Notes: generated by a model from the letters alone, not told the origin. A stretch of DNA of 64,000 nt from Macrostomum hystrix (GCA_950097015.1 CATNEN010000031.1:1736001-1800000), one strand, 5' to 3'. Positions 1,750-27,056 are shown, numbered from the stretch's first letter. Numbers and translations are program-made.

Positions 1750-4700
1750 ATGGCCATCCGGCAGCTGAGCGTCTCGGCTGTGATCTTCCTGTTCGTCGGA
1801 CTGCACTGGTCGACGCTGTTTGTTGAAGCCTCGCTGGAGGCCGAAGTCTGCACGGCCAGCGCCGACTCGCCGTTCTCGTTGAGCGGACCCAGCTCGGCTG
1901 CCTCGGTGCGGCTTCCGGTGCTGGCCGCGCTGCGACGTCCGGGCACCGACGGCTTTGGCTGCTCCCGGCTGGCGGATGGTGAGGCCGCGAGTGCAATTTC
2001 GCCTTCGTCCTGCGCCGGCACCTGAACTTGCGTCATTGCCTCTAATTCTCCTCTAGCGTTTGAAGCGTTGAGGAATATGAATTTTGAGGAATAGGAATTT
2101 TCAGGAATATAAACTTTGAAGAATTTGAAGTTTGAGGAATATGATGTTTTGGAATATGAACCTAGGGGAACATCAATAAACTTTGAGTAATATAAAGATT
2201 TTGGGGAATATTTAGTTCAGGCAATATCAGTAAAGCTTTCTTGGAAACTCTAGGTTCGTGGGAAGTGAAACCTTCCCCCTTCATCCTAAATATCTTTCAC
2301 GATTTCCCGTTAAATCATTTCAATTGGACATCACCTCCTCACTCCAGATGCCTGGCCAGCCATCAAAGCCCTGGAGTGGGCGTTCGACCTTCTCAACGCC
2401 GAGTCCTCGACGGCGGGCTCAAGTGTGCCAATCAATGACAGCTACATTCCCGGAGTGAAGTTCGGTGAGAACTGTCAAGTCATCATCAGATTTCAGGCAA
2501 TCCAAGTTGAATATGGCTGAAATAGGCCTTCAAAATCTCATTGGCTGACGTTAGTCACGTGCTTGGATTTCCAGACAGAGAAAATATAATCTAGCTGTGC
2601 TAGGCCAGATGTACTGTCAGTGGTACAGCCGCAGCTATTGCGCGGGGCTTCTCAGCTCGATTCCGCGGCGAGGCCACATTCATTTGGGGCGCAGCAGCGG
2701 AGAGAAGGCTTGGAGGCTTGTCGTGCAATTTACGCCCTTGATTGGAACTTGGAACTTCCAAGGCACAGTGAGAGTGCACACTGCCTGACGATGAGAGAGT
2801 CAGCGAAATTGGGAGAATTGCCTCTTCGTTGGCTGCGGGTCTAGTGTCATCAAACGATGCGCCATTGCCCGCAGCCCTCCGGAAATAATTTCACTAGCGT
2901 ATTGTTAAAGTACGAGCGTACTAAAGGTTTAAGTGCATTTCTCAAGGGCTTTCGGGTGAGTTTCGAGCTCCCGATCTCACAGTCAAAAGTTCAAAACTCC
3001 AACCACGAACCAATGACCACTTGACTTGGCCATTTTAATTTATATGCAGTGATGACCGTTCACGACACCTGCGGTCGGCGCCAGGTGACAGACTCGCTGC
3101 TGGACACCCTATTTCCCGACCTAGTGTCCGCGTCCGCCTCCTGCTCGGCCAACCGGACACTCGTCCCCGGCGTCATCGGCCCGGCGGACACCGTCTCGGC
3201 GGCGTCCCTGGCTCCGCTGCTCAATGACTTCGGCATTCCGCTGGTGTCTTACTCGGCCAGAGGACCGGCGCTCAGCGACCGGTCCGCCTTCCCCAACTTC
3301 TTCAGGACCATTCCGAGCGACACGGCACAGTTTGATGTGAGTCGGTTGGAGCACTGACTCAGCGGTAGGATCTGCTGCTGGGTAGCGGGATGTTAGGGGC
3401 TGAATGAGCTCAGCGATATTGCGTCTGACTCGAGTACTGAAGTTCCTGAGTTCGAATCTGCATATCTACACACCCGGTTAATGCGTTCCTGCGTACAGCA
3501 TTTGTGTACTCAGGGGTATAATTACTGTGATAATTTTTAACAGTTAAAAAACTCTTTAGGTTCTGAGCAGTAATATTTGAGAAATCAATGTTACTTATAT
3601 CTGATCCATAACATATCGCAACGGGGGGGGGCTGAGTGGCAGAGCTGTCTACCGCGTTTGCCTCTCGCACCAATGTCCGTGAGCTCGATTCCGCGGCGAG
3701 GCCACATTCATTTTGGAGAGAAGGCTTGGGGCTTGTCGTGCAATTTACGCCCGACAAGGGCCAACCTCCAAGGCACAGTGAGAGTGCACACTGCCTGTGT
3801 GAGTGTGTGCCTGAGTACGGTATCTGTGTGCGTGTGTGCTCAGGAGTCGCGAAATGGGAAGAATTGCCTCCTTGCTGGCTGTGGGTCTAGTGTCACCAAA
3901 TGATTTGCCTTTGCCTGCAGACCTTGCGCAGTTATTATTATTATTATCACAAATCGCAACAGGCCATCGGAGCAGTGCTCAAGCAGTACAACTGGACTCA
4001 CATCGGCATCTTGTACACGACTGACGCTTACGGCACGGCAGGACAATCGGCCCTCATCAGCCTCAGCGCCTCCATCGGTGTCTGCGTTGGCCAGGTGTCG
4101 GCCATCAGCGTCTCACCGACAGCCGCGGAGGTGACGGCAGCGCTCAGCCGGCTGCGGGACTCCGGCGTGCGCGCCATCGTGGCCGTGGCCTCGCTGACAG
4201 ACTTCTCCGTCCTGTTCAACGACCCAGCGTCTGCCACATTCCAATGGATCATGTCCGACTCGTTCGGCAATCCGCCAGCTCTGCTAGGCGTGAAGAATGC
4301 TCGCGGCCTGACCTCCGTGAGCCTCGGCTTCCGACCGAACGACGCCTTCGAAACGTTCTACCTGAACAAGCTGAAGTCAATCAGCGAGAGCACGGACCCA
4401 AACGCCGATGCGGCCTTCAAGCAATGGTACATGCAGGCCAACAACTGCACCCTGACTGGCATGACCAACTTTGCCAGCCCAACGGCGCCCGCCTGTCCGG
4501 CCTTCAACATGGCCGCAGCTGTTGCCCGATACCAGCAGAACCGCCTGGTGGAACCGGCCATCGACGCCGTCTTTGTCATCGTGCGGGCTGTCCGTCAGCT
4601 GTGGCAGGCCAAGTGCGCCGGCGTGAGGGGCGTCTGCGCGGCGCTGCGCAGCGCTACTTACGCTGAGCTGCGCACTGCGATTGCCGGCACAGATTTCAGC

Positions 4701-7700
4701 TATACGGATGCTGAGCGAATTTCCAGGTGATTTCCTAAAAATAATAAAGACAATAACATTTGCACGAGGTTGTGCGAATTACTTTGACAGTCTATCCAAA
4801 ATAATTGATAATTGATAGTCGCATCTGAAGGCTGCGTACGGCTGTTCAGTCCATCCTCAATTTAACAGCTGGGTCAACCGACGAAATTCAGAGTTAAGTG
4901 TCTTGCTAAAGGACACACTCTGCGTCCAGTGGAGTCAAGTATCGAAACCCCGACTTGTAAGTCGTGAGTACGAAGCTCTAACCAGTAGGCTACACTTTCC
5001 CATCGTCAGGCGAAGTGCGAGAGAATAGTTCTCCAAGTGTGGGCTCGCCACTCACACCCGTATTAAAATTGAAGGTGCTGAAGTGTTCGTGGTTTAGAAA
5101 TTGGTTCACTGATTGGCGATAAAATTTGGTTGAGATATTAACGGGCTCTAGACGTCAGGAAATTGAACTTGAAGTTGAAACAGGCCTTTTTAAACCCCTG
5201 GCATAATCCAGATATTCAACAGCCAGCAGTGAGCCAGACCGTCAGGTGAAGCGGCTGCGTCTGACGAGCTCCGGCGATCCCTACGAGACGAACTACTTCA
5301 TTCACAACCTGCGCCCCAACGGCACCGGCTTCGCCTACGCGCGAGTCGGGGTTCGACTCGCTGGCACTTTTCCCGAGTGGCTGCCCGGAAGTGTGAACAT
5401 GTTCGATCTGGCCAGGTAAGTCTGGACTGCTATGCAAACACGATCTGAAGCGGCTGAGTGGAGAGCGGTTAACGCGTTCGCCTCTCGCTATAATGTCCCT
5501 GAGCTCGATTCCGCGGCGAGGCCACATTAAATTGAGGCGCAGCCGTGGAGAGAAGGTTTGGGGGCTTGTCGCGCAATTTACGCCTATAAGGGGGCCAACC
5601 TCCAAGGCACAGTTAAAGTGCACACTGCCAAACGATGAGAAAGTCAGGGCAGATGTACACACCCGTGTGAGTGTGTGCCTATGTACAGTATCTGTTTGCG
5701 TGTGCGGGATGAACAGAATTGCCTGTGTCACCAAATGATATCTGCCGTTGCCCGCAGCCCTCCTGCAATAATTATTATTATTACACGCAATCGGAAGTCG
5801 CGCTGTGACTCGAAGTAGTCTGCATTAACGAAAAAGCACCTCAAACTACTCAACAGGGACGCCGTGATCCCCACGCCGCAGTTCTCCTGCCCGACAGCGC
5901 CCTGTTCCGGCTGCCTCGCCGCGGCGCCAGACTTCAAATACGCCCTCGTATCTGGCGACGTCTACCTGCTCGGCGTGTTCTCCGTGCACTCGCCCGGCTC
6001 CAGCCCGCGCAGCTGCGGCGCCCTCAGCCTGGACGGTAGCAGCGAGCTGGACGCGTTTCTCTACTCCATCAGCCAGGTGAACGCTTTGGCGAATTCGAGC
6101 AGTCTGATTGGCGCAGTGGCAATCGACGACTGCGGCAGCTCCGTGCTGGCCCAGGACCTGGTCGACTCACTGCTCAGCGGCACCCGAAGCATTCCCGGCG
6201 TTGACGCCAGCCGGATCATTGGAGTGATCGGCGCCGGTGGTGCAGCCAGCACTGACGGTATCGCGCAGATGCTGGCCTCGCAGCAGAGGTCGCAGATTTC
6301 CTACCGACCAGCGGCTCTGGCGTCCAGTCCGTACCTGTACCAGACCGCGGCCTCCTCGGCAGCCGAGGCTGAGGCTCTGCTCTCCACGCTGCAGTCGCTA
6401 TCCGTCAACTATGTGCAGCTGGTCAGCTCGCAGGATCCGGTTAGTCGGGAGACGGTGCGCCTATTCCTGGCCGGAGCGAGCTCGCGACGCATCTGTGTCT
6501 CGGCCAGATTCGAGCTTGGCACCAACGGCAGCCACGCCCAGGTCATGGCGCAGGTCCGGACGCGCACAGCCGCAGCCACTGTGGTTGCCTTGGTGACGGC
6601 TAGCGACGCGGCTCTCCTAGTGTACCAGGTGACGGCACCGTTTCAGCTAGTCGGCGGCTCCGCCTGGGGCTCCAGCCAATCAGCGCTGGCCTCAGCCAGT
6701 ACCAGCCAATCGCTGGGTGTCATTACTGCTGGCGAGCCGCGATCCGCTTCTACCACACCCTATCAGAGCTGGGCAAGCCGCACTCGTGGCCTGGCCACTG
6801 AGACAGCCGCCAATCCCTGGTACTCTGAGTGGTTCGAAACCCTCAACAGCTGCTCCCTGTCCGCCACTAACATGCGCGGCTATACAGCACTCTGCCCGAC
6901 AGTCGACTCACACGTGCTCACAGCATCGTCCAGGTACACCGAATCGGCCTACACCAGCGCAGTGCAGAGGGCGTCTGCCACCTACGCTTCGGCAGCGTCC
7001 AGCCGACTGCGGCGCATTTGTACCTCGGGCAGCGTCGGCGTCTGCACCGCCTTCTGGTACGCCGGCAATGGCACGGGCAGCGGGCTGCAGGCTGACCTGC
7101 TCGGACAGTTCGGCGCCAGCAGCTTCACCGATCCGGTCACAGGATCCGCCTTTGTCTTCGCCAGTCGCTCGGTGCCAAACTTCGGCCTGACTCTGTACAA
7201 TGTGAGAAATGGCAGCGGCCCAGTTTACCAGGCCATCGGAGCCACTGTGCCCAGCTTCAGTCTGAGCACTGGCTTGCTGCAGCTTGCTCACGGCGCCACC
7301 TCGCTTAGCTCTTCTTGCACGGACGTCTCCAGGTGCAGCGAGTGCGCGCCGTACTTTACAGGCACACCCAGCTACCTGTACCTGCCAGGTGACCTACTCA
7401 TTGGTGTTCTTGTGAACGTGCGTGCGCCTGGCTCAACTGGCGGTGCCTGCGGTGCCGTGAAAACCGGAGAAGGTTTCGTCTACACCGAGGCAGTCCGGTG
7501 GACTCTGAACTACATCAACAACGGCAGCAAGTCAGACGTGCGTCTAGGCGGCTCTGTAAAGCTTGGCGCTCTCATCCTGGACGTCTGCGGCTCCTCGTCG
7601 GTGGCCATCAGTCTGGTGACGTCCATCACGCAGGGCACGCTGCTTCTGGCCGACAGGTCCACCGGGTCCAACATTGACGCCTCTCGAATCCGCAGCTGGG

Positions 7701-10700
7701 TCAGCTACGGCGACTCGGTGACCACCGCGCTGGCTCCGGTGCTCAGAAACCTGGGCGGCGTCCCTTTGGTCAGCCCGTCGGCCAGCTCGGACGATCTGAC
7801 TGCGCTAGCCGTGTTCCGGACAGTGCCGTCCAGCCTGTCCCAGGTTCCGGCCATCATAGAAGTCATCAAAAGGTTCAACTGGAAGTGCGTCCAGCTGGTG
7901 TACTCCAATGATGACTACGGCAACAGGCTGGCGACGGAATTCCGCGTGCAGGCTCTCAGCAATGGCATCTGCGTGCACCGCTGCCTGCAGGTCACCACGG
8001 ACGGCTCAGTGGCTATGATCTTAACTAGCATCATTGGTAAGACCGAGCTGGTTGATTCAACTCATTGCATTGTCGAGATATTCAACGATTCTCGCCCGGT
8101 GCCTGGTGGCAAGAACCACAAATAAAGGAATATTTTTTCTGCTCACAAAATTTCACCATGTAACCATGTCGGCTATCATTGTTAACTATTTTATATTGGT
8201 TAAATTGTAAATGTTTTCATTTTTATTCCATATGGACTCATACGGAACAATGTTACTTGTTCCTGTAACAAGGGTCTTCGACAAGAATTGCTGAATATCT
8301 CGACGATGGCGACGTAGAACGGCTTTAAAAGTTATTTCATGGTCAAGGGCTGAAAATTTTGATCCATTTGGTGGACTTTCACAAAAATCTGTCAAAAATC
8401 GGTCATCGGCTATCGTGAAGTAGGCAGCGGGTATTTGAAATTCTTCTCGTCCTCTTTCCCTAGGGGGAAAAATAGCATTGTCTTTCTACTGTTAAAGTAA
8501 TAGAATTTTTCACATCCCTCTGTCCCCACTGCAGACGACATTTCCAAGACCCGCGTGGTGGTCGTGCTATCAGATAATGCTGCCGATCTAGTCCAGCTGA
8601 CGGCGGCCAACAATGGTCTGGTGTTCATCGCCAGCAACTTCTGGGGCGAGATGACGCGCGACAGTTCACTCAGCGGCCTGGGCCCGGGCGCCAACAACAG
8701 CTGGGTGCTGCAGGTGAACTCACCTGATGTTGCCGGAGTGACTGTCCACCTGAGCAGCTTGTCGGCAGCCAGTAGTAGCGACAATCCTTGGCTGGTGAAT
8801 TTCTACGAGGCCCTGTACAACTGCAGCACCAGCGGCAGTCTGGCCTACAGCTCCCGGTGCAATAACACCTGGCCAATCACAGCATCGCCGCAGTTCTATC
8901 CGGGCCTGTTCACCATGACAACCACTAACGCGTTGTTTAGCATTGCGCGCGCCTTCGGTGACATGCTGGCGACTAGCTGCTCGAGCTCCTACACCAGTGA
9001 GTCACATTTGCTGGGGAAAACTGATTCAGAAAAGGGTGCATAGACGCAATGGTCCAAGGACTACTAGATAACTAATTAGACTAGACTTTACAACGCAGTT
9101 TTCCAAGTGATCCTTGCAATGGTCTCGCACCAAGGTGCCTGAGCTCGAATCCGCGGCAAGGCCACATTCATTTCGGGTGCAGCCGCGGGGAGAAGGCTTG
9201 GGGGCTTGTCGTGCAATTTACGCCCCTGAGGGCCAACCTACAAGGCACAGTGAAAGTGCACACTGCCTGACCATGAGAAAGTCAGGGCAGATGTACACAC
9301 CTGTGTGAGCATGTGCGTGCGTTCGGTATCTGTGTGAGTGTGTGCTCAAGTGCCTGCGAAAGGGGCAGAAGTGCCTCCTCGCTGGCTGCAGGTCTAGTGT
9401 GACCAAATTGTGCTCCTTGGAGGTTGGCCCTCAAGGGCGAAAATTGAACGACAAGCCCCTAAGCCTGCTGACCGCGGCTGCACCCCCAAATGCATGTGGC
9501 TTTTGAGCCGCGGAATCGAGCTCAGGGACCATGGTGCGAGAGGCTAACGCGTTAGACCGCTCTGCCACTCACCCCCAAGGCACAGTGTACCCCCAAGGTA
9601 CAGGTCAAGGGTGGGTATTACTGTCAGCCCGACATCTTCAATGCATCCCACATCGTGCAACACGCAGCCGTCTGTCCGAATTTCTGGTCGAACGCCGGAC
9701 TAAACGGCCAACTGGCAGGCAAACTCTCTGCTGTCAGCTTCACAGCTCTGGGCACTACAAGCGAGTTCAAATTCCTTGGCACTCGCGACGGCAACATGGG
9801 CTGGCTGACGCTCAACCGGGTGAACGCTGACTACGTGCCAGTGGCTACATATGTATCTGGAGCGTTCAACCCATTGCTGGCATTCTCCAGCCGCAGTTCC
9901 ACATACAGCTCCGTGCCTGCCGCCTGCCCCAGCTGCACGAATTGCCCGAAATCGCTGGACAGGACGGAGAAATTTCTCTACGTGCCCGGCCAGTTGCTGA
10001 TTGGCGGTAAGTCCCTGCGGGCGGGGCCGCGCTCATTCCCTGAGCTTCACATTCCTGAACTGCACATTACCTGGACTGCACATTCCCTGGACTGCACATT
10101 CCCTGAACTGGACATTCCCTGAACTGCACATTCCCTGAACTGCTCATTCCCTGAGCTTCACATTCGCGGAACTGCTCATTCCCTGAGCTGCTCATTCCCT
10201 GAGCTGCTCATTCCCTGAACTGCTCATTCCCTGAACTGCTCATTCCCTGAACTGCTCATTCCCTGAACTGCTCATTCCCTGAACTGCTCATTCCCTGAAC
10301 TGCTCATTCCCTGAACTGCACATTCCCTGAACTGCTTATTCCCTGAACTGCTCATTCCCTGAACTGCACATTCCCTGAGCTTCACATTCGCTGAACTGCT
10401 CATTCCCTGAACTGCTCATTCCCTGAACTGCTCATTCCCTCAGCTTCACATTCGCTGAACAGCTCATTCCCTGAACTGCTCATTCCCTGAACTGCTCATT
10501 CCCTGAACTGCTCATTCCTTGAACTGCTCATTCCCTGAACTGCTCATTCCCTGAACTGCTCATTCCCTGAGCTTCACATTCCCTGAACTGCTCATTCCCT
10601 GAACTGCTCATTCCCTGAACTGCACATTCCCTGAACTGCTTATTCCCTGAACTGCTCATTCCCTGAACTGCTTATTCCCTGAGCTTCACATTCCTGAACT

Positions 10701-13700: not shown

Positions 13701-16700
13701 TTTCTCACAGATAATCAGAGCAGAGGTTGTAGAGGTCAAAGCGTCGGACTCACCACTTGAAGGTCGGGGGTTCGATTCCACTTGAACAAAGTGTGTCCTT
13801 TAGCAAGACACTTCACTATGCATTGCTTCAGTTCACCCAGCTGTTAAATTGGTAACAGCATTAGCTGGGGAAATTGGGGGTGGTTTTTCAATTTTTTCTC
13901 ACAGTCTTCCATCTTAAAACTGCACAGGCACGACCTACTGGGGCAACAGCCAGGCCGCTTTGAGCAAAGTCACCAATGGCCGGTATCCGCGCGCCATCAC
14001 GTTCGGCTTTGAGACGGCCGATCTCACAGATTTCGAGCGCAGCTATCTGATTTCTAAGAATCCGAGCACCTATTCGTCAGTGAATCCCTGGTTTAACGAG
14101 TACTACGAATTCTTGTTCCAGTGCAGCCTGTCGACCAGTTCACCTTTCTACAGTCGCACTTGCAGCTCTTCAACAATGTCGCTGACAGACGCCCCAACTT
14201 ATTCGCAGGCAAGTTTTTCACCACCGGGGGAATATTTTGGAGATACAGGAAAAAGAAAACTGTGGGTCTTGGGTCTGTTGAACAGTAGTTTACGGCGAGC
14301 TTGCAAGCTAAGAGGTCAGGGGTTCGAATCGTAGTACGGAGGGACAATTTGTGTCCTTGAGCAAGACACTTAACTGCCGGGGTGTTTGAGTGTTTGGTCT
14401 GGCGCTCCCCTTCCCCAGTCCATGGACTGAACAGCGGTACGCAGCCCCCGCAATAGCTGCGGCTGTGCTGTCGGCTGCACATCAATTTACAAATCCGTGA
14501 CTCCAAAAAATGGCACAGGACTCTCTAGCACTGTACGTGGTGAACGCAGTCTATTCGGCAGCTCTGGGCATTCACAATGCTCTGGTGAACATCTGCGGTC
14601 CGGTCTACAACGGCATCTGCAGTGATTTCTACGGTTCGGGCGAGAAGCGCCAGTGGGTTCTAAACGGCATCAAGTCGGCCGTGTTTGTCGACGCCACAAA
14701 CTCGAACTTCACAATGAACTCGGCTGGAGACAGCAACCGCGGCTATCACATCTACGACCTGCGCACCTCGAGATCCACGCCGTTTTATGCCAGCGTCGGC
14801 GCCTACAACGACATGGCGCTTCTGAAACTGCGCAGCGACTTTGGCCTGGCCTGGGCCAGCAACTGCAGCCTGCCCGGCACCTGCGAGGATGCCTGCCCCA
14901 ACCTGGGCCGAAACCTGTGCGTGCAGGAGGGTGCAGTGGACTGCTAGCCTAGTTCATTGATAACACTGGATTGCTAGCCTAGCCTATTGATAACACTGGA
15001 TTGCTAGCCTAGCCTATTGATAACACTGGATTGCTAGTCTAGCCTATTGATAACACTGGATTGCTAGCCTAGCCTATTGATAACACTGGATTGCTAGCCT
15101 AGTCTATTAATAACACTGGATTGCTAGCCTAGCCTATTGATAACAGTGGATTGCTAGCCTAGTCTATTAATAACACTGGATTGCTAGCCTAGCCTATTGA
15201 TAACACTGGATTGCTAGCCTAGTCTATTAATAACACTTGATTGCTAGCCTAGCCTATTGATAACACTGGATTGCTAGCCTAGTCTATTAATAACACTGGA
15301 TTGCTAGCCTAGCCTATTAATAACACTGGATTGCTAGCCTAGCCTATTGATAACACTGGATTGCTAGCCTAGCCTATTGATAACACTGGATTGCTAGCCT
15401 AGCCTATTGATAACACTGGATTGCTAGCCTAGCCTATTGATAACACTGGATTGCTAGCCTAGCCTATTAATAACACTGGATTGCTAGCCTAGCCTATTGA
15501 TAACACTGGATTGCTAGCCTAGCCTATTGATAACACTGGATTGCTAGCCTAGCCTATTGATAACACTGGATTGCTAGCCTAGCCTATTGATAACACTAGA
15601 TTGCTAGCCTAGCCTATTGATAACACTGGATTGCTAGCCTAGTCTATTAATAACACTGGATTGCTAGCCTAGCCTATTGATAACACTGGATTGCTAGCCT
15701 AGCCTATTAATAACACTGGATTGCTAGCCTAGCCTATTAATAACACTGGATTGCTAGCCTAGCCTATTGATAACACTGGATTGCTAGCCTAGCCTATTGA
15801 TAACACTGGATTGCTAGCCTAGCCTATTGATAACACTGGATTGCAAGCCTAGCCTATTGATAACACTGGATTGCTAGCCTAGCCTATTGATAACAGTAAA
15901 TTGCTAGTCTATCTCATTGATATTCCATTGTTTAACATCCCACCGTCACCCATACCGCCCAACGCAGGTCCGTCTACATGCAGGTGAACTCCAGCACAAT
16001 GGACTTAAACCTGGTCCAGTTCCTGTCGGTTCACGAAGGCCGATCGACCTCTCTTTGTGGCGCCATGGATCTGCAATCGGGCTTCAACAATCTCCTGGCC
16101 TTCCACTACGCCCTGGATCTCATCAACAACAACAGCGACGCCGCGGTGGCCGGCTTCAAATTCGGCGGCCTGAGCATCGACGTCTGTCGGTCGGAAGCTC
16201 GTGCAGCCACCTTCGCCTTCTCGTACACCTCGGGCACCGGCATCTGCAGCTACGCCGGCTTCTCCGACCTCGTCGGACCGCTGACAGCCGTGGCCTACTT
16301 GACCGAGGGTTCCGCGGTCAGCGCCCGTCTGGCCAGCATCGTGCCCGACGCCACGGTGGTGTCGCCTGATGCTACGGCGATTTCCTTGAGCAGTCGAGCA
16401 TTCTATCCAAGGTTTCTTCGAGTTGTACCGCCAGACAGTGTGCAGGTGAGATGCAGTAGCAATCCCCTGTGCTCCTTGATCAATGGGCTAGGCTAGCAAT
16501 CCCCTGTGCTCCTTGATCAATGGGCTAGGCTAGCAATCCACTGTGCTCCTTGATAGGCTAGCAATCCACTGTGCTCCTTGATCAATGGACTAGGCTAGCA
16601 ATCCACTGTGCTCCTTGATTAATGGGCTAGGCTAGCAATCCCCTGTGCTCCTTGATCAATGGGCTAGGCTAGCAATCCACTGTGCTCCTTGATCAATGGG

Positions 16701-19700
16701 CTAGGCTAGCAATCCACTGTGCTCCTTGATCAATGGGCTAGGCTAGCAATCCCCTGTGCTCCTTGATCAATGGGCTAGGCTAGCAATCCACTGTGCTCCT
16801 TGATCAATGGGCTAGGCTAGCAATCCACTGTGCTCCTTGATCAATGGGCTAGGCTAGCAATCCACTGTGCTCCTTGATCAATGGGCTAGGCTAGCAATCC
16901 ACTGTGCTCCTTGATCAATGGGCTAGGCTAGCAATCCACTGTGCTCCTTGATCAATGGGCTAGGCTAGCAATCCACTGTGCTCCTTGATCAATGGGCTAG
17001 GCTAGCAATCCACTGTGCTCCTTGATCAATGGGCTAGGCTAGCAATCCACTGTGCTCCTTGATCAATGGGCTAGGCTAGCAATCCACTGTGACCCTGGAT
17101 CAATGGGCTAGGCTAGCAATCCACTATGTTCCTGGATCACTGGACTAGGCTAGCAATCCACTGTGCTCCTTGATCAATGGGCTAGGCTAGCAATCCACTG
17201 TGCTCCTTGATCAATGGGCTAGGCTAGCAATCCACTGTGCTCCTTGATCAATGGGCTAGGCTAGCAATCCACTGTGCTCCTTGATCAATGGGCTAGGCTA
17301 GCAATCCACTGTGCTCCTTGATCAATGGGCTAGGCTAGCAATCCACTGTGCTCCTTGATCAATGGGCTAGGCTAGCAATCCACTGTGCTCCTTGATCAAT
17401 GGGCTAGGCTAGCAATCCACTGTGCTCCTTGATCAATGGGCTAGGCTAGCAATCCACTGTGCTCCTTGATCAATGGGCTAGGCTAGCAATCCACTGTGAC
17501 CCTGGATCAATGGGCTAGGCTAGCAATCCCCTGTGCTCCTTGGTCAATGGGCTAGGCTAGCAATCCCCTGTGCTCCTTGATCAATGGGCTAGGCTAGCAA
17601 TCCACTGTGCTCCTTGATCAATGGGCTAGGCTAGCAATCCACTGTGCTCCTTGATCAATGGGCTAGGCTAGCAATCCACTGTGCTCCTTGATCAATGGGC
17701 TAGGCTAGCAATCCACTGTGCTCCTTGATCAATGGGCTAGGCTAGCAATCCCCTGTGCTCCTTGATCAATGGGCTAGGCTAGCAATCCACTGTGCTCCTT
17801 GATCAATGGGCTAGGCTAGCAATCCACTGTGCTCCTTGATCAATGGGCTAGGCTAGCAATCCCCTGTGCTCCTTGATCAATGGGCTAGGCTAGCAATCCA
17901 CTGTGCTCCTTGATCAATGGGCTAGGCTAGCAATCCACTGTGCTCCTTGATCAATGGGCTAGGCTAGCAATCCACTGTGCTCCTTGATCAATGGGCTAGG
18001 CTAGCAATCCCCTGTGCTCCTTGATCAATGGGCTAGGCTAGCAATCCACTGTGCTCCTTGATCAATGGGCTAGGCTAGCAATCCACTGTGCTCCTTGATC
18101 AATGGGCTAGGCTAGCAATCCACTGTGCTCCTTGATCAATGGGCTAGGCTAGCAATCCACTGTGCTCCTTGATCAATGGGCTAGGCTAGCAATCCACTGT
18201 GCTCCTTGATCAATGGGCTAGGCTAGCAATCCACTGTGCTCCTTGATCAATGGGCTAGGCTAGCAATCCACTGTGACCCTGGATCAATGGGCTAGGCTAG
18301 CAATCCACTATGTTCCTGGATCACTGGACTAGGCTAGCAATCCACTGTGACCCTGGATCAATGGGCTAGGCTAGCAATCCACTATGTTCCTTCATCAAGG
18401 GGCTAGGTTAGCAATCCACTGTCTTCTCCATAAAGCAATCAATCTCAGCCCTTCAAACCTGCTCCATTAATTTGACCAGATTGACGCCCTGCTAGACGTG
18501 GCCGGCTACTACAACTGGTCGGTTGTGTCGCTGATCTACGATAGCACTCCGGCCGGACTGGCTGGCAAGGCTGCCTTCGAGGCGGCCATCGCTAGGCGCA
18601 ACGGCAGCCGGACGGTGTGTCTCAAGTACATCGGCACCGGCGGCTCTGGCTCCGCCATCAGTTCGGACGAAGCCAGAACAGCTTTGCAGTCAGCCAGCCG
18701 GCTGGCCTACGTCAACGCGCTGATTGCCTACCTGCCCGAGGACGGACTGCGCATCCTGCTGACTGCCGTGCGCGAACTCGGACTGCAGGGCCGCTTCGTG
18801 CTGCTGGGACTGGACGGCTGGGCGGACAAGATGTCCGTGGTGCAGGGCCTGGAGGCGGCTGCGCTCGGAGCGGTTACTCTGCGCCAGACCTACTTCACCA
18901 TCCCCGACCTGGACCGCTGGGTGTCCGAGATCGGACTGGCCCCAGCCAGAAGGAAGGGCATCCCGGTGGACTGGCTGGAGGTGAGTGTTAGACAAGGCGG
19001 AAGAGTGTTAGACAATGCGGAAGAGTGTTAGACAAGGCGACAGAGTGTTAGACAAGGCGAAGAGTGTTAGACAAGGCGGTATTAAAGTGTTAGACAAGGC
19101 GGTATTAAAGTGTTAGACAAGGCGAAGAGTGTTAGACAAGGCGAAGAGTGTTAGATAAGGCGAAGAGTGTTAGACAAGGCGAAGAGTGTTAGACAAGGCG
19201 GTAATAAAGTGTTAGACAAGGCGAAAGAGTGTTAGACAAGGCGGTAGAGTGTTATACAAGGCGAAGAGTGTTAGACAAGGCGGTATTAAAGTGTTAGACA
19301 AGGCGGCAGAGTGTTAGACAAGCTGCTGAATCTTAGACAAGTGAGATGCAGTAGCAAAGGCGAAGAGTGTTAGACAAGGCGGTATTAAAGTGTTAGACAA
19401 GGCGGTATTAAAGTGTTAGACACGGCGAAAGAGTGCTAGATAAGGCGAAAAAGTGTTAGACAAGGCGGCAGAGTGTTAGACAAGGCGGCAGAGTGTTAGA
19501 CAAGGCGAAAGAGTGTTACACAAGGCGGCAGAGTGTTAGACAAGGCGAAAGAGTGTTACACAAGGCGGCAGAGTGTTAGACAAGGCGAAAGAGTGTTACA
19601 CAAGACGGCAGAGTGTTAGACAAGCCTGCAGAGTGTTAGACAACAGTTGATGCCGCATAGCCAAACAACTCGAACCCAGGAATTCTGGCAGCACACGCTG

Positions 19701-22700
19701 AAATGCCGCCTCACTGGCAGTTCAGTGCAGCAGTCGCAGTACGCGACCATCTGCGACCCCAGTGGCAGCCTGCCAGCGGGCGCGCTGACCCAGAACGGTG
19801 GCACCTATTCCACCATCCTCTCTGCCTACATCGCCGCCAAGGGCATCGCCGACTTTCAGCGCGCCGAGTGCGGCACCATGGCAACGGATGTGTGCCTGTA
19901 CCGCATGTCCTCTGCTACCCGCCTAGCAACAATCTATCGTTACATTAGCAACGCCCAGTGGCGGGTGCTGCAGGGCCGGCTTGGCAACAATAGCCTGCTG
20001 TTCAGGTTCACAACAGACGGCTACGGCGACCGCGGCTACGATGTGCTGAACTTTGTGCGCATAGGGTCCGGCTTTGTCTACAAGCCTTTCGGCTACTGGA
20101 CCAACAGATTTGTGCCTCTGGCCGGCCAGAGGTGAGATTTGGCTTGATTTTGTCAAGACTGAGTTTTGAAACAGTTAAAAATGGTCTTAAATTTCTTCAA
20201 TATGATATCAATGATCCTTGATTTACCCAATCAGTCCCCAAAGATCCTCAATTTCCCCAATTAGTCACCAAGGATCCTCAATTTTCCCAATCGGTCACCA
20301 ATGATCCTCAATTTTCCCAATTGGTCACCAATGATCCTCAAATTTCCCCATTGGTCACCAATGATCCTCAAATTTCCCTATTGGTCACCAATGATCCTCG
20401 AATTTCCCCATTGGTCACCAATGATCCTCAATTTTCCCAATTGGTCACCAATGATCCTCAAATTTCCCCCTTGGTCACCAATGATCCTCAAATTTCCCAA
20501 TTGGTCACCAATGATCCTCAATTTGCCCGATTCATCAACAGTGATCCTTAATTTCCCTAGTCGGTTACAAATTTCTTATTGATTTTTTCAAAATCAAAAG
20601 ATTTCCAAAAGATTAGCTCCGAAATGTTTTTTTCACAACATATCGTCTGTCACTTAACCCAGCAGCCTGGCCACCTACGGGCCCGACGGCAGCTCGCTTA
20701 CCGCAATTCCTTGGTCTGCCTGTCCCGCGGGCGTTGACTGCGGCTGCCCCGGCGACTCCGGCGATCCTTTGGCACTGCTGCCGCGCCCGGACGTGTGGGA
20801 GCGAGCCATGACACCCTGGGGAGCGGTGCTACTAGCCCTGACCGCCCTGGGAGCCCTGGTCACACTGACTGCCATCGGGTTCCTGGCCTACGCATTCCCA
20901 CGCAAGCTGCAGGGCACAGCCGGCACCAACTACTTGGGCTTCGCCTGCCTGGTCGGCCTTCTCTGCGTGTTCGCCATCAACATCGCCTTCATCGCCCACG
21001 CCACCCCGGTGGTGTGCACCATCCGGCGCTTCGGCCTCTCCCTAGCCTATTGCGTCATCTTTGCTAGCCTCCTAGTGCGCAGCGTCGTCAACTGGACCGT
21101 CTACCGGGCGTCGGACAGGCCGGCCGAGGCACCGGCGTTCGCCGGGCTCAGCCATCCGGTCAGCCTGCTGGGCCTGGCAGTCTGCATCTGCCTGGTGTCG
21201 GCCATGCTTGGTGCGGAGTGGCTCATCCTGCAGAGGCCGGACGCCACGGACCTGGTGGCCTATGAGGGCGTGGCCTGGAGCCGCTGCAGTCCCACTAGTT
21301 TCTATGACGAAGGCCTGGCGCTGAGCTGCCTGTACCCGGCCGGCCTGTTGCTGGCCGCCCTTGTCTACTCGCTGCTCACCTGGGACGCTAATCTGGCCGA
21401 CTCGCGCCAGGTCGCCTTAGCGCTGCTGTTCTGCGCCGGAGCCCAACTCTGCTGGGGCTGCGTGTCCACCCTGACTGGCTTCAAATGGCGCGACCCGTCT
21501 GTGGTCATTGGCAACCTGGTCGCTGCAGGCGCTGTGCTGCTCTGTCTGTACATGCGAAAAATTGTCCAGGTGTGCCGGGCAACCCAGAGTGCAAATTCGT
21601 CAGCTGAGGAGCAGGACATCAAGACGAGGAACTACCCTACCAAGAGCATCAGCATGGGTGAGCCATTGGCTTAACATACTGTTAGTAGTGGGATGGTCAA
21701 ATTTCTGGGCTTTTGTTTTGGCCCAACACCTCGTCGTTTAACTGGGGTAAACTGGATTTTTTCTAAGGGGCTCAGGCTTGGCCCGACACCTTATCAGTTA
21801 ACTGGGTTTTTTTCTAAGGGGTTTAGGCTTGGCCTGACACCTTATCAGTTAACTGGTTTTTTTCTAAGGGGGTTTAGGCTTGGCCACACACCTTATCAGT
21901 TAACTGGTTTTTTTCTAAGGGGGTTTAGGCTTGGCCTCACACCTTATCAGTTAACTGGTTTTTTTCTAAGGGGGTTTAGGCTTGGCCACACACCTTATCA
22001 GTTAACTGGTTTTTTTCTAAGGGGGTTTAGGCTTGGCCTCACACCTTATCAGTTAACTGGTTTTTTTCTAAGGGGGTTTAGGCTTGGCCACAAACCTTAT
22101 CAGTTAACTGGGGTTTTTTCTAAGGGGGTTTAGGCTTGGCCACAAACCTTATCAGTTAACTGGCTTTTTTCTAAGGGGGTTTAGGCTTGGCCCGACACCT
22201 TATCAGTTAACTGTTTTTTTTCTAAGGGGGTTTAGGCTTGGCCACAAACCTTATCAGTTAACTGGGGTTTTTTCTAAGGGGGTTTAGGCTTGGCCACAAA
22301 CCTTATCAGTTAACTGGGGTTTTTTCTAAGGGGGTTTAGTCTTGGCCCGACACCTTATCAGTTAACTGGGGTTTTTTCTAAGGGGGTTTAGGCTTGGCCT
22401 CACACCTTATCAGTTAACTGGGGTTTTTTCTAAGGGGGTTTAGTCTTGGCCCGACACCTTATCAGTTAACTGGGGTTTTTTCTAAGGGGGTTTAGGCTTG
22501 GCCTCACACCTTATCAGTTAACTGGGGTTTTTTCTAAGGGGGTTTAGTCTTGGCCCGACACCTTATCAGTTAACTGGGGTTTTTTCTACGGGGGTTTAGA
22601 CTTGGCCCGACACCTTATCAGTTAACTGGTTTTTTTCTAAGGGGGTTTAGACTTGGCCCGACACCTTATCAGTTAACTGGGGTTTTTTCTACGGGGGTTT

Positions 22701-23009
22701 AGACTTGGCCCGACACCTTATCAGTTAACTGGGGTTTTTTCTAAGGGGGTTTAGGCTTGGCCACAAACCTTATCAGTTAACTGGGGTTTTTTCTAAGGGG
22801 GTTTAGGCTTGGCCTCACACCTTATCAGTTAGAGTGCAGACGATATTAAATGCCGAGACTAGAAGTAACTGTTGATTGACTTCTGTTCGCGGGTACTCTT
22901 ACGAGTGTAAAAAATACACTAGACAACCTACTGATAAATAGTATTTTTGTTGAAAGAAAAAGCATGAAACTTAAACTTTTTTGTTCCAGAAAACATCACT
23001 ACAAATTAG
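1750..23009 (+). CDS. Giant class C (glutamate-family) GPCR, ~2,820 aa: signal peptide, five tandem Venus flytrap/ANF-receptor domains, 7TM
   Basis: Exons: 1750-1978, 2348-2464, 3050-3336, 3963-4726, 5212(or 5230)-5415, 5857-8036, 8535-8996, 9668-10006, 11879-12207, 12550-12810, 13473-13641, 13928-14208 (GC donor), 14519-14916 (donor uncertain), 15968-16445, 18480-18980, 19680-20131, 20663(or 20666)-21657, 22990-23009 (last exon tentative). Phases chain to one 8,466-nt ORF. Hydrophobic N-terminus. Repeated mGluR/CaSR-type motifs (GVIGP…LVSYSA…LSDRSAFPNFFRTIPSD; VISYAAT…LSNKQLYPYFSRTVPSDD; FYPRFLRVVPPD; NPWFxEY/F; YNW). 7TM with CTIRRFGLSLAYCVIFASLLVR and WRDP motifs. Confidence 0.88.
2655..2870 (+). 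mobile_element. SINE family A copy (partial), GPCR intron 2
   Basis: Shares gctcgattccgcggcgaggccacatt…ccaaggcacagtgagagtgcacactgcc…ctagtgtca with the other family A copies. Confidence 0.75.
3623..3947 (+). mobile_element. SINE family A, apparently full length (tRNA-like head, (TTA)n tail), intron 3
   Basis: A-box-like gctgagtggcagagc, B-box-like gagctcgattcc, TTA-repeat tail 3932-3947; dispersed copies elsewhere in the window. Confidence 0.8.
4815..4995 (-). mobile_element. SINE family B (CORE-like) copy, intron 4
   Basis: Reverse complement of gtgtcctttagcaagacacttaactctg…cccagctgttaaa with a tRNA-like head. Confidence 0.7.
5449..5783 (+). mobile_element. SINE family A copy, intron 5
   Basis: Same head, body and ATT-repeat tail as the 3623-3947 copy. 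Confidence 0.8.
5857..8036 (+). CDS. GPCR exon 6 (2,180 nt): complete VFT2 and first half of VFT3
   Basis: Within ORF 5864-8125; caacag acceptor 5855-56, G|gtaag donor 8037. GDVYLLGVFSVH and GDLLIGVLVNVR module starts. Confidence 0.9.
9115..9410 (+). mobile_element. SINE family A copy (5'-truncated), intron 7
   Basis: Homologous body sequence. Confidence 0.75.
9411..9575 (-). mobile_element. SINE family A 5' half, inverted, abutting the previous copy
   Basis: Reverse complement of head and first half of body (ccgcggaatcgagctcaggg…gcgttagaccgctctgccactca). Confidence 0.75.
10031..11878. repeat. Intronic minisatellite, 16-bp unit cattccctgaactgca, fills GPCR intron 8
   Basis: Directly visible; ~1.85 kb with recurring variant blocks. 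Confidence 0.95.
12228..12525 (+). mobile_element. SINE family B (CORE-like), intron 9
   Basis: tRNA-like head, then tgtgtcctttagcaagacacttaactctgcattgcttcagttcacccagctgttaaatgggtacc, then AT-rich tail. Confidence 0.75.
12994..13358. repeat. Intronic minisatellite, 17-bp unit cacccaccaccccacag (intron 10)
   Basis: Directly visible. Confidence 0.95.
13715..13875 (+). mobile_element. SINE family B copy (3'-truncated), intron 11
   Basis: ggttcgattcc B box plus CORE-like segment. Confidence 0.7.
14285..14485 (+). mobile_element. SINE family B copy, intron 12
   Basis: ggttcgaatc B box, gtgtccttgagcaagacacttaac, and shared 3' ccagtccatggactgaacagc segment. Confidence 0.7.
14942..15910. repeat. 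Intronic minisatellite, 30-bp unit ttgctagcctagcctattgataacactgga (intron 13)
   Basis: Directly visible; ~32 units. Confidence 0.95.
16456..18422. repeat. Intronic minisatellite, 37-bp unit tccactgtgctccttgatcaatgggctaggctagcaa (intron 14)
   Basis: Directly visible; ~53 units; homologous to the reverse complement of the intron 13 unit. Confidence 0.95.
18983..19640. repeat. Intronic minisatellite, 19-21-bp unit agagtgttagacaaggcgg (intron 15)
   Basis: Directly visible; starts inside the splice donor. Confidence 0.95.
20205..20560. repeat. Intronic minisatellite, 30-bp unit aatgatcctcaattttcccaattggtcacc (intron 16)
   Basis: Directly visible. Confidence 0.9.
20663..21657 (+). CDS. GPCR exon 17: final Cys linker and class C seven-transmembrane domain
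   Basis: Seven hydrophobic segments in ORF 20769-21674; class C TM3 and TM7 motifs; G|gtgagc donor at 21658. Confidence 0.9.
21715..22830. repeat. Minisatellite, ~51-bp unit (ggtttaggcttggccacacaccttatcagttaactggttttttttctaaggg), intron 17
   Basis: Directly visible; period 51 measured at 21961/22012. Confidence 0.95.
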
Positions 23010-23471: not shown

Positions 23472-23950
<479 letters not shown>

Positions 23951-27012: not shown

Positions 27013-27056
27013 TCATCAGAAGGAAGCAGGACAGAATGGTATCCCGTGGGCGCGGG

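What the first reader, a model, noticed from the sequence alone, without database searches (positions are those of the whole stretch)
1750..23009. Class C GPCR with five tandem Venus-flytrap domains on one 7TM
Seen: the spliced ORF (~2,820 aa) has a signal peptide and five successive ~450-aa modules (approx. 1900-5415, 5950-7290, 7385-9900, 9985-14850, 16000-20700). Each has recognisable VFT landmarks (first strand + Cys; 'G..+.D.C'; 'VIG…+SY.A….LS….+R++P.D'; 'NPW+.E++'; 'AVY/AVF'). One class C 7TM follows. Established: mGluR, CaSR, T1R/V2R and GABA-B receptors carry a single VFT per chain and signal as dimers. Inference: this is a multi-lobed receptor that could integrate several ligands or act as an extended adhesion/sensing rod. 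I know of no functional characterisation of such an architecture, although similar unannotated invertebrate proteins may exist in databases.
Basis: partly seen in the sequence, partly recalled or inferred. Interest (0 to 1): 0.9.

Follow-up and report, generated by a model that had tools for sequence, protein, structure and literature searches.

The report
Five-flytrap class C receptor gene
This flatworm gene really does encode one 2,821-residue glutamate-receptor-like GPCR carrying five ligand-binding "Venus flytrap" domains in a row instead of the usual one. The same unstudied architecture is conserved in nemerteans and molluscs, with 2-4-domain versions in brachiopod-to-amphioxus relatives.

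Summary
Confirmed. Window 1750-23009 (+) is one 18-exon gene (17 GT/GC-AG introns). It encodes 2,821 aa: a signal peptide, five complete VFT (ANF_receptor) modules, a short 3-Cys linker after each module, and one 7tm_3 domain.

RNA contigs from four runs show seven junctions directly. One 5,825-nt contig runs from exon 6 through the 7TM into the 3' UTR, and its internal coordinates equal my predicted exon sum exactly. So this is one mRNA, not several genes.

The closest proteins are two truncated Macrostomum lignano models (78-79% identity). Full-length colinear proteins with five ANF stretches and one 7tm_3 exist in nemerteans and molluscs. Four-VFT forms occur in arthropods, a hemichordate and a crinoid, and 2-3-VFT forms in amphioxus. 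All are labelled "uncharacterized".

A module tree shows V2-V5 are positional orthologues across phyla (support 99-100). V1 groups with arthropod V1.

Fifty-three cysteines are conserved, whereas the canonical amino-acid-pocket residues are not. A lone loop Cys in V5 sits where mGluRs make their intersubunit disulfide.

Best reading: a dimeric, mGluR-derived class C receptor with a disulfide-stapled VFT stack. Ligand and signalling are untested. Nine literature searches found no description. It is a new variant of a known kind, and of high interest.

The parts
1750..1978 (+). Exon 1: start codon, signal peptide, orphan Cys34, first strand of VFT1
   Evidence: ORF and GT donor. Hydrophobic N-terminus. 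The junction itself was not seen directly. A continuous alignment to M. lignano P0001 starts at aa 40. The X1 2,966-nt contig extends 849 nt upstream of 4034, which equals 704 nt of CDS plus 145 nt of 5' UTR.
2348..2464 (+). Exon 2: VFT1
   Evidence: In-frame GT-AG model. Matches the local VFT HMM. Colinear with P0001/P0151.
3050..3336 (+). Exon 3: VFT1 lobe 1, including loop Cys147
   Evidence: ANF_receptor E 1.3e-13. Splice model.
3963..4726 (+). Exon 4: VFT1 lobe 2
   Evidence: ANF_receptor E 2.8e-16. The 4726>5212 junction is seen in RNA contigs of 4 runs.
5212..5415 (+). Exon 5: end of VFT1
   Evidence: Both flanking junctions (4726>5212 and 5415>5857) are seen in 4 runs.
5857..8036 (+). 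Exon 6: 3-Cys linker 1, all of VFT2, linker 2, first half of VFT3, in one uninterrupted exon
   Evidence: ANF_receptor E 3.7e-34 with 2 stretches. RNA contigs cover it, with X4 bridging 7018-7683. The AF2 model has pLDDT 78.7 and matches mGluR VFT structures at TM 0.73-0.86.
8535..8996 (+). Exon 7: VFT3
   Evidence: Junctions 8036>8535 and 8996>9668 are seen in RNA contigs.
9668..10006 (+). Exon 8: end of VFT3, linker 3, first strand of VFT4
   Evidence: RNA contig pieces end at 10006/7. The next junction is supported by the exon-sum check.
11879..12207 (+). Exon 9: VFT4
   Evidence: GT-AG model. Exon-sum check. Colinear with P0151.
12550..12810 (+). Exon 10: VFT4 (ISYAAT and RTVPSD motifs)
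   Evidence: ANF_receptor E 3.2e-18. Exon-sum check.
13473..13641 (+). Exon 11: VFT4
   Evidence: ANF_receptor E 1.4e-4, below the Pfam cut-off on its own. Model and exon-sum check.
13928..14208 (+). Exon 12: VFT4 (NPWF motif); GC-AG intron follows
   Evidence: The donor reads CAG|GCAAGT. Exon-sum check.
14519..14916 (+). Exon 13: end of VFT4, linker 4
   Evidence: Model. P0151 aligns through aa 2006. Exon-sum check.
15968..16445 (+). Exon 14: VFT5 lobe 1, including lone loop Cys2100
   Evidence: ANF_receptor E 1.4e-6. It must be included in the 5,825-nt contig for the exon sum to hold.
18480..18980 (+). Exon 15: VFT5 lobe 2
   Evidence: ANF_receptor E 2.3e-11. The loose-end sequence before 19678 equals the end of this exon.
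19680..20131 (+). Exon 16: VFT5
   Evidence: Junction 20131>20663 is seen in 4 runs. Base 19680 corresponds to record position 4194, exactly as predicted.
20663..21657 (+). Exon 17: end of VFT5, 3-Cys stalk, seven-transmembrane domain, start of C-tail
   Evidence: 7tm_3 E 1.3e-23. Seven hydrophobic segments. PDB best hit mGluR2 7TM, E 5e-8. GT donor at 21658.
22990..23009 (+). Exon 18: last six codons and stop; 3' UTR runs on to at least about 23177
   Evidence: The loose-end sequence after 21657 in 4 runs matches 22990 onward, and an AG acceptor precedes it.

Best explanation
SHOWN.
- The region is one expressed 18-exon gene of a macrostomid-like flatworm. Its closest proteins are from Macrostomum lignano, at 78-79% identity.
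- It encodes a 2,821-aa class C (mGluR-related) GPCR. The parts in order are a signal peptide and five complete Venus-flytrap modules in series. Each module is followed by a roughly 10-residue linker holding three invariant cysteines. After the fifth linker come about 25 further residues of stalk, a 7tm_3 domain and a short tail.
- It belongs to a conserved, uncharacterised bilaterian family. Members carry 5 VFTs in flatworm, nemerteans and molluscs. They carry 4 in arthropods, a hemichordate and a crinoid, and 2-3 in amphioxus.
- The five modules are positional orthologues across phyla, so the stack is old and every layer is kept.

INFERRED.
- The receptor works as a dimer, as other class C receptors do. 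VFT5 carries a lone, invariant Cys in the loop where mGluRs form their intersubunit disulfide, and the ectodomain has an odd number of cysteines.
- Each VFT's lobe 2 is stapled to the following linker. The lobe-2 Cys aligns with mGluR3 C240, and the second linker Cys aligns with the first Cys of the mGluR3 cysteine-rich domain (C527 by my recollection of the numbering).
- The stack would therefore be a fairly rigid tower that can pass closure or reorientation of one layer to the next, and finally to the 7TM pair.
- The 7TM keeps the TM3-ECL2 cysteines and an R/D version of the family's K/E charge pair, which I read as the class C K3.50/E6.35 ionic lock. That fits a signalling-competent receptor.
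- Which layer(s) bind ligand, and what ligand, is unknown. It is probably not classical glutamate recognition in every layer.

My odds: architecture and family about 0.97; dimeric stacked-relay mechanism about 0.45.
For: One mRNA.
- Joints 4726>5212, 5415>5857, 8036>8535 and 8996>9668 appear in RNA contigs. Joint 20131>20663 appears in 4 runs, and loose ends match 18980>19680 and 21657>22990.
- The 5,825-nt X1 contig places 10006 at record position 1776 and 19680 at 4194. The difference of 2,417 nt is exactly the summed length of exons 9-15.
- The 2,966-nt X1 contig links VFT1 to exon 6, and an X4 contig bridges 7018-7683.

Domains.

Orthologues.
- HMMER against 1.8 billion representatives gives 1,108 hits, with eight proteins of 2,730-2,872 aa aligned colinearly.
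- BLASTP gives single full-length HSPs of about 2,800 columns at 27-31% identity to Tubulanus, Babylonia, Sinanodonta, Argopecten and Physella.
- Pfam finds 5 ANF stretches and 1 7tm_3 in three of them.
- Transcript-sized Logan contigs of 9.0-10.2 kb carry complete 2,730-2,885-aa ORFs in other samples.
- Four-VFT forms are found in Saccoglossus, Anneissia, Centruroides and Dinothrombium by the local HMM. Proteins of similar length come from Limulus, Ornithodoros, Procambarus, Anabrus and Timema, but the stringent HMM count scored only 2-3 full modules in these. Two- and three-VFT forms are found in Branchiostoma.

Module tree (careful IQ-TREE). The V2, V3, V4 and V5 clades have support 99/97 to 100/99. 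V1 of the 5-VFT proteins plus arthropod V1 has 100/99. V2+V3+V4 together have 100/100.

Cysteines.
- 53 are conserved in at least 12 of 14 orthologues: 7 per VFT plus 3 per linker.
- The C240-equivalent is present in 50/50 spiralian modules.
- A loop Cys is present in 10/10 V1 and 10/10 V5, and in 0/30 V2-V4.

Structure and 7TM.
- V4 aligns with the mGluR3 VFT at E 3e-56, against 3e-20 for CaSR.
- The AF2 model of V2 matches mGluR VFTs at TM 0.73-0.86.
- The 7TM is the best-conserved region overall. It has invariant TM3/ECL2 Cys and a consensus K...E pair (R...D in the window).
Against: - No functional data of any kind exist: no ligand, no G-protein coupling, no dimer shown.
- Ten junctions rest on canonical sites, exon-sum arithmetic and orthologue colinearity, not on a directly seen joint. 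Read laying refuses the minisatellite-filled introns.
- The linkers were modelled with low confidence (pLDDT <50 at model residues 1-24 and 490-502). I had no coordinates, so the disulfide pairing is inferred from counting and alignment only.
- The V1 loop Cys could simply pair with orphan Cys34 within one chain.
- The TM7 'PK' motif that I recall for class C is RK here.
- The window's 7TM matches solved mGluR 7TMs only weakly (E 5e-8).
- The window's modules have a biased amino-acid composition, which can distort tree placement.
Confidence: 0.8

Rival explanations
1. Multi-ligand integrator. Each of the five VFTs binds its own small ligand, and the receptor computes a combined response.
For: Each module is a complete bilobed VFT by HMM coverage, and V2 also by AF2 model. 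Each has been kept as a distinct orthologous lineage since before the flatworm-nemertean-mollusc split. Each has its own motif variants.
Against: I checked four positions equivalent to the mGluR alpha-amino-acid contacts T188, D208, Y236 and D318. That numbering is from memory, anchored on the alignment.
- These positions vary among orthologues within every module.
- In this protein no module keeps all four: V1 R/D/Y/D, V2 A/S/V/S, V3 S/S/Y/N, V4 T/D/Y/T, V5 T/D/A/D.
- V2 is the fastest-evolving module, at 24-26% identity to the orthologues.
- The structural cysteines are far better conserved than the pockets.

Non-amino-acid ligands are not excluded.
Confidence: 0.2
2. Adhesion or trans-cellular rod. 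The VFT stack mainly serves as a long, rigid spacer or protein-interaction surface that reaches a partner on another cell or in the matrix. The 7TM reports engagement rather than a diffusible ligand.
For: The scaffold is conserved more strongly than the pockets (52 of 220 near-invariant columns are Cys). There are 23 N-glycosylation sequons. The number of layers changes between phyla (2-5) through duplication of the middle modules, while the first and last modules stay orthologous. That pattern is what would be expected if length itself is tunable.
Against: No adhesion-type domains (EGF, Ig, cadherin and the like) were found, only ANF and 7tm_3. V4, a middle layer, is the most conserved module (36-41% identity, as high as the 7TM). 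It retains most mGluR lobe-interface motifs, which hints at a real ligand site rather than a mere spacer.
Confidence: 0.2
3. Not one gene. The region could be several adjacent single-VFT genes plus a separate 7TM gene, or an assembly or annotation fusion of a tandem array.
For: Some very long 'CASR, partial' database models are evidently of this artefactual kind. Polypterus P0014, for example, has ten mostly partial modules covering only HMM positions about 130-460.
Against: RNA contigs from four runs cross the module boundaries. One contig spans exon 6 to the 3' UTR with an exact exon sum. VFT2 and half of VFT3 share a single exon. There is only one signal peptide and no internal TM segment. 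Colinear orthologues with positional module orthology exist in other phyla.
Confidence: 0.02
4. Non-signalling relic. The 7TM is only a membrane anchor, and the protein acts as a ligand sink or co-receptor for another class C subunit, in the way that GABA-B1 needs GABA-B2.
For: The window's 7TM has R for K in TM3, D for E in TM6, and RK instead of the recalled PK in TM7. Its C-tail is only about 30 aa. Nemerteans carry two adjacent paralogues (neighbouring LOC numbers in Tubulanus and in Lineus), which would suit obligate heterodimers.
Against: The 7TM is the most conserved region of the family (mean 0.58, with 28 near-invariant columns). The charge pair is retained conservatively. No second copy lies in this 64-kb window.
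Confidence: 0.08

Closest known systems
Metabotropic glutamate receptors (mGluR2/3 and other groups), class C GPCRs
   Same: These are the best solved-structure matches for both the VFT (E 3e-56, full length) and the 7TM. The AF2 model of V2 superposes on mGluR VFTs. Also shared are the intra-VFT cysteines, the lobe-2 Cys equivalent to mGluR3 C240, a loop Cys at the dimer-disulfide position, the RxxPxD, NPWF and NAVY motifs, and the TM3-ECL2 disulfide cysteines.
   Different: There are five VFTs in series instead of one. There is no NCD3G cysteine-rich domain; only a 3-Cys remnant follows every VFT. The agonist-contact positions are not conserved. The residue aligned to glutamate-binding mGluR3 R68 is Leu in V4. 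The 7TM is divergent, with RK instead of PK in TM7.
Uncharacterised predicted orthologues, for example Tubulanus polymorphus XP_074641006.1, Babylonia areolata XP_076434694.1, Sinanodonta woodiana KAL3856574.1 and Macrostomum lignano A0A1I8IKL0
   Same: The same 5 x ANF + 7tm_3 architecture and length (2,730-2,885 aa). They are colinear over the full length and carry the same 53 cysteines.
   Different: Identity is only 26-31% outside flatworms. The M. lignano models (78-79% identity) stop after VFT4 and so hide the 7TM. None has a name, a paper or a function attached.
Four-, three- and two-VFT class C proteins of arthropods, ambulacrarians and amphioxus, for example Saccoglossus XP_002735016.2, Centruroides XP_067137488.1 and Branchiostoma XP_035691717.1 / XP_035696128.1
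   Same: Tandem VFTs on one 7tm_3. Arthropod V1 groups with spiralian V1, and in the quick tree the arthropod last module is sister to spiralian V5 (support 94). The first module carries a loop Cys.
   Different: They have fewer layers. The middle modules were duplicated independently. The last module lacks the loop Cys (0/6).
GABA-B receptor subunits
   Same: A class C receptor without a cysteine-rich domain, with a short stalk between the VFT and TM1 (established knowledge; architectures are summarised in PMC12716839).
   Different: It has a single VFT and is not among the listed 60 of 98 PDB sequence matches for the VFT or the 7TM. The stalk here contains three invariant Cys.
Bacterial tandem-VFT sensor kinases BvgS and EvgS
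   Same: Two VFT domains in series on a dimeric transmembrane signalling protein (PMC4352136, PMC5573083, abstracts seen). This is a precedent for relaying a signal through stacked clamshells.
   Different: They belong to a different clamshell family, have a histidine-kinase output, and are bacterial. The resemblance is an analogy, not homology of the architecture.

Membership tests
Class C (glutamate-family) GPCR | 7tm_3 seven-transmembrane domain | tested here: met
   Pfam PF00003 E 1.3e-23, 84 bits against a cut-off of 33.5. Seven hydrophobic segments. PDB hits are mGluR 7TMs.
Class C (glutamate-family) GPCR | Extracellular Venus-flytrap (ANF_receptor / LIVBP-like) ligand-binding domain after a signal peptide | tested here: met
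   ANF_receptor hits in all five modules. Five full-length HMM matches. An AF2/Foldseek match to mGluR VFTs. A hydrophobic N-terminus.
Class C (glutamate-family) GPCR | Conserved TM3-ECL2 disulfide cysteines and the TM3/TM6 charge pair | tested here: met
   C2602 and C2692 are present in 14/14 orthologues. The family consensus is a K...E pair, R...D in this protein. The assignment to positions 3.50/6.35 is from memory.
Class C (glutamate-family) GPCR | Constitutive dimer | not testable with these tools
   Indirect only. There is a lone invariant loop Cys2100 in V5 at the mGluR intersubunit-disulfide position, and the ectodomain has an odd Cys count of 55.
Class C (glutamate-family) GPCR | G-protein coupling | not testable with these tools
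mGluR/CaSR/T1R subgroup | One VFT followed by a nine-Cys NCD3G cysteine-rich domain | tested here: not met
   Five VFTs. There is no NCD3G hit in the window exons or in three orthologues at E<=0.01. Only three Cys follow each VFT.
mGluR/CaSR/T1R subgroup | Conserved alpha-amino-acid contact residues in the VFT cleft | tested here: not met
   No module of this protein keeps all four tested positions, and they vary among orthologues. Residue identities are from memory, anchored on the alignment.
mGluR/CaSR/T1R subgroup | Closest sequence relatives are mGluRs | tested here: met
   V4 against PDB: mGluR3/5/7/2 at E 1e-56 to 1e-43, against CaSR at 3e-20.
Spiralian five-VFT class C family (defined here) | Five positionally orthologous VFTs, 3-Cys linkers, one 7tm_3, about 2,700-2,900 aa | tested here: met

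The most novel reading that the evidence does not exclude
Multi-VFT receptors form an overlooked, ancient bilaterian branch of class C GPCRs. In it, activation is relayed mechanically through a disulfide-stapled, dimeric tower of two to five flytrap layers, and the number of layers has been tuned by duplicating the middle modules. If each layer is about 5-6 nm (my rough estimate, not measured), the tower would be tall enough to span an intercellular cleft. That would be a mode of class C signalling, or of trans-cellular sensing, with no studied precedent. The family is missing from the usual model organisms and so has never been examined.
Probability: 0.3. Interest if true: 0.85.

Novelty: new variant of a known kind. 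Interest (0 to 1): 0.72.

Why it matters
Class C GPCR mechanism is built on one rule: one flytrap per subunit, two per dimer. Closure of that pair is passed through a cysteine-rich lever, or a short stalk, to the 7TMs.

Here is a transcript-supported receptor with five flytraps in series, and it is not a one-off. The same five layers, each orthologous, have been kept in flatworm, nemerteans and molluscs. Shorter stacks occur in arthropods (including insects and ticks), a hemichordate, a crinoid and amphioxus.

This raises directly testable questions. How does a conformational change travel through stacked VFTs? Which layers bind ligand? Why is the scaffold conserved more than the pockets?

It also matters for annotation. 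Such genes are easily split or truncated, as both M. lignano models are, or dismissed as fused tandem arrays. For flatworm and arthropod biology it is a candidate sensory or neuromodulatory receptor with no vertebrate counterpart seen in my searches.

Tried and rejected
The repeat-filled introns (8>9, 10>11, 13>14, 14>15, 15>16) therefore could not be spanned directly. I used the record coordinates of one long contig and loose-end sequences instead.
- The spliced protein cannot be handed to the database tools by reference. Pfam, PDB and AF2 were run on single exons or on orthologue parts.
- The word-based homologous-protein search with Tubulanus P0003 returned only 8 proteins. It was useful mainly for the nemertean paralogue pairs.
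- Rfam found nothing in the window.
- The ESM Atlas search returned only single-VFT clusters and gave no architectural information.
- I looked for a second copy of the gene in the window (a possible heterodimer partner) and found none.
- I began mapping the mGluR3 S151-equivalent by hand from the printed alignment. I dropped it because the numbering was ambiguous by one residue. Only T188, D208, Y236, D318 and C240-type positions anchored on clear motifs were used.
- Nine full-text searches found nothing on this architecture in GPCRs. The terms covered tandem or multiple VFT, ANF and VFD domains, Macrostomum, Saccoglossus and amphioxus GPCR repertoires. Only the bacterial BvgS, EvgS and CdgH tandem sensors turned up.
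- The Polypterus and Clarias 'CASR partial' giants were rejected as relatives of this architecture. Their modules are repeated partial lobes, typical of mis-joined gene arrays.

Full report
OBSERVATION. The + strand between 1750 and 23009 holds a chain of open-frame pieces separated by introns, many of them filled with minisatellites. A splice-site scan joined them with GT-AG introns (one is GC-AG) into a single ORF. RNA evidence then revealed one further short intron near the 3' end (21657>22990). The final model has 18 exons and 17 introns and encodes 2,821 aa. The ATG is at 1750 and the stop codon ends at 23009.

TRANSCRIPT EVIDENCE. Four runs of one 2020 study hold 89-93% of the sampled words of exon 6. 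Their contigs skip the introns with GT..AG ends, so they are cDNA. Five joints were seen directly: 4726>5212, 5415>5857, 8036>8535 and 8996>9668, and 20131>20663. Two more were seen as loose-end sequences that match the neighbouring exon: 18980>19680 and 21657>22990.

One X1 contig of 5,825 nt starts at 7062 in exon 6. Base 10006 sits at record position 1776 and base 19680 at 4194. The difference of 2,417 nt is exactly the summed length of my exons 9-15. The contig then continues through the 7TM exon and the last exon for 188 nt. A second X1 contig of 2,966 nt runs from 7076 back through exons 5 and 4 and a further 849 nt. That is 704 nt of predicted CDS plus 145 nt of 5' UTR. An X4 contig bridges 7018-7683. 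VFT1 through the 7TM is therefore one mRNA. The ten junctions not seen as joints are also supported by near-gapless alignments to the independently annotated M. lignano proteins over aa 40-2006.

DOMAINS. Pfam on exon translations gives only ANF_receptor (with the weaker related Peripla_BP_6) in all five modules, plus one 7tm_3 at E 1.3e-23. Exon 6 alone contains all of VFT2 and the first half of VFT3, which proves tandem VFTs in one reading frame. An HMM built from the modules finds five near-full-length copies at aa 40-541, 559-1022, 1037-1504, 1514-1991 and 2007-2498. Hydropathy shows a signal-like N-terminus and seven TM segments at aa 2532-2788. There are 23 N-glycosylation sequons in the ectodomain. 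No NCD3G domain is detected. An AF2 model of exon 6 (pLDDT 78.7) matches mGluR VFT crystal structures with TM 0.73-0.86 on the target.

RELATIVES. HMMER of exon 6 against 1.8 billion cluster representatives gave 1,108 hits. The best are two Macrostomum lignano UniProt models (78-79% identity by BLASTP). These end after VFT4, so they are truncated annotations.

Next come proteins of 2,730-2,885 aa that align colinearly over the full length at 26-31% identity. They are from Tubulanus and Lineus (nemerteans), Babylonia, Physella, Bulinus, Sinanodonta and Argopecten (molluscs), plus several transcript-sized Logan contigs of unnamed samples. A partial brachiopod protein from Lingula (2,414-2,466 aa) also matches, with four full modules and no 7TM by the local HMM. 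Pfam finds five ANF stretches and one 7tm_3 in each of the three orthologues tested.

My local HMMs count 15 representatives with 5 VFT + 7TM, 7 with 4 VFT + 7TM, 10 with 3 and 13 with 2. The four-VFT proteins come from Saccoglossus, Anneissia, Centruroides and Dinothrombium. Proteins of similar length from Limulus, Ornithodoros, Procambarus, Anabrus and Timema scored only 2-3 full modules under the stringent HMM count. The 2-3-VFT proteins come from Branchiostoma. All carry names such as 'uncharacterized protein' or 'mGluR3-like'. The giant Polypterus and Clarias 'CASR partial' models have repeated partial lobes and look like mis-joined gene arrays.

MODULE HISTORY. I built a careful ML tree of 81 modules (the quick version is). 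It recovers V2, V3, V4 and V5 of the ten 5-VFT proteins as four separate clades with support 99/97 to 100/99. V1 forms a clade with arthropod V1 (100/99). Spiralian V2+V3+V4 form one clade (100/100). In the quick tree the arthropod last module is sister to spiralian V5 (support 94).

The five-layer stack therefore predates the flatworm-nemertean-mollusc split. The first and last layers are older, shared at least with arthropods, and the middle layers multiplied separately in different lineages. Two caveats apply: the tree has no outgroup, and the window's modules have a biased composition.

V4 is the best-conserved layer (36-41% identity to nemertean and mollusc, equal to or above the 7TM). 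V2 is the least conserved (24-26%).

ANATOMY RELEVANT TO MECHANISM. Of 220 columns identical in at least 13 of 14 orthologues, 52 are Cys. Every unit has seven VFT cysteines plus three in the following linker.

The HMMER alignment of V4 to mGluR3 places the invariant lobe-2 Cys on mGluR3 C240. It places the second and third linker Cys on the first two Cys of the mGluR cysteine-rich domain. In mGluR3, as I recall, C240 bonds to the first of these. The C240-equivalent is present in 50/50 spiralian modules. I infer that each linker is a remnant of the cysteine-rich domain stapled back onto the preceding lobe 2, which makes a stiff joint.

The loop that carries the intersubunit disulfide in mGluRs has a Cys in 10/10 V1 and 10/10 V5, but in 0/30 middle modules. 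By parity counting, the V5 Cys (C2100) has no possible intrachain partner. The V1 Cys (C147) could pair with orphan C34.

Four positions equivalent to mGluR alpha-amino-acid contacts vary between orthologues, and in this protein they are complete in no module and all lost in V2.

The 7TM keeps the TM3 and ECL2 cysteines. It also keeps a conservative R/D version of the family's K/E pair and a TM6 Trp, but it has RK where I recall PK in TM7.

INTERPRETATION. It is shown that this is a single expressed gene for a five-VFT class C receptor belonging to a conserved family. It is inferred that the receptor is a disulfide-linked dimer whose stapled VFT layers form a tower and relay conformational change to the 7TM pair. 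The ligand is unknown.

The 'rod' idea fits the scaffold-over-pocket conservation and the variable layer number. Against it, no adhesion domains are present and a middle layer is the most conserved. The 'separate genes' reading is excluded.

KNOWN OR NEW. The closest characterised relatives are the mGluRs. The membership tests for class C are met. The tests for the mGluR/CaSR/T1R architecture (one VFT plus NCD3G, conserved contacts) are not met.

The nearest precedents for stacked clamshells are analogies only: bacterial BvgS and EvgS (PMC4352136, PMC5573083) and, from general knowledge, the ATD-over-LBD layers of ionotropic glutamate receptors.

A 2025 survey of glutamate-family architectures lists only ANF+NCD3G, ANF alone and Cache+EGF for metazoans (PMC12716839). 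Nine full-text searches found no description of tandem-VFT GPCRs. That library lacks most subscription journals, so prior mention elsewhere cannot be excluded. Predicted orthologues are already in public databases, though unnamed. I rate the finding a new variant of a known kind.

EARLIER NOTES OF THIS SCAN. Note s1-278399 says the modules differ at amino-acid-binding positions, and my count agrees with it. Note s1-278309 says inverted minisatellites bracket exon 14. The arrays are real, but the long contig includes exon 14.

Noticed in passing
window 10034-11876, 12994-13358, 14937-15922, 16457-18422, 18983-19643, 20209-20557, 21750-22831: Seven introns of the gene are largely filled by minisatellite arrays with periods of 16-52 nt and up to 116 copies. 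The 30-mer array before exon 14 and the 37-mer array after it share a core in opposite orientation. This was also flagged by note s1-278309. The 5,825-nt RNA contig nevertheless includes exon 14.
   Followed up: partly
window 2635-2744, 5483-5704, 9123-9342 (also about 3574-3900): A dispersed element of about 220 nt is present in the same orientation in at least three introns, at 74-87% identity. RNA contig depth over these copies is hundreds to thousands, against about 10 over the exons. That suggests an abundant, transcribed SINE/MITE-like repeat. There is no Rfam match.
   Followed up: partly
window 1737-1752: The start codon is immediately preceded by an acceptor-like ...CTACACTACAG|ATG. 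The RNA contig carries 145 nt upstream of the ATG whose origin I could not lay. The 5' UTR may be spliced or trans-spliced.
   Followed up: no
window 37050-44647 (- strand): A neighbouring gene on the opposite strand resembles SARA/endofin. It has a FYVE zinc finger (E 1e-20, in an 887-aa open frame at 41987-44647) and a SARA_C domain (E 1e-31, at 37050-37886).
   Followed up: partly
window 28624-29631; 46076-49683; 52077-60015: Transposon remains are present:
- An integrase-core fragment.
- A non-LTR retrotransposon with endonuclease, reverse transcriptase and RNase H pieces.
- Three copies about 3-4 kb apart (two of them identical in the residues shown) of a Pif1-helicase (Helitron-like) fragment.
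   Followed up: partly
window 23472-23950 and 25440-27124: Just downstream of the gene lie a long (ACAG)n microsatellite of about 120 copies and a low-complexity repeat block of about 1.6 kb that is open in all three + frames.
   Followed up: no
orthologues P0003/P0165 (Tubulanus) and P0166/P0167 (Lineus): Both nemerteans carry two five-VFT paralogues with consecutive LOC numbers on the same chromosome-scale contig, 49% identical to each other in Tubulanus. This could mean a heterodimeric pair. No second copy lies in this window.
   Followed up: partly
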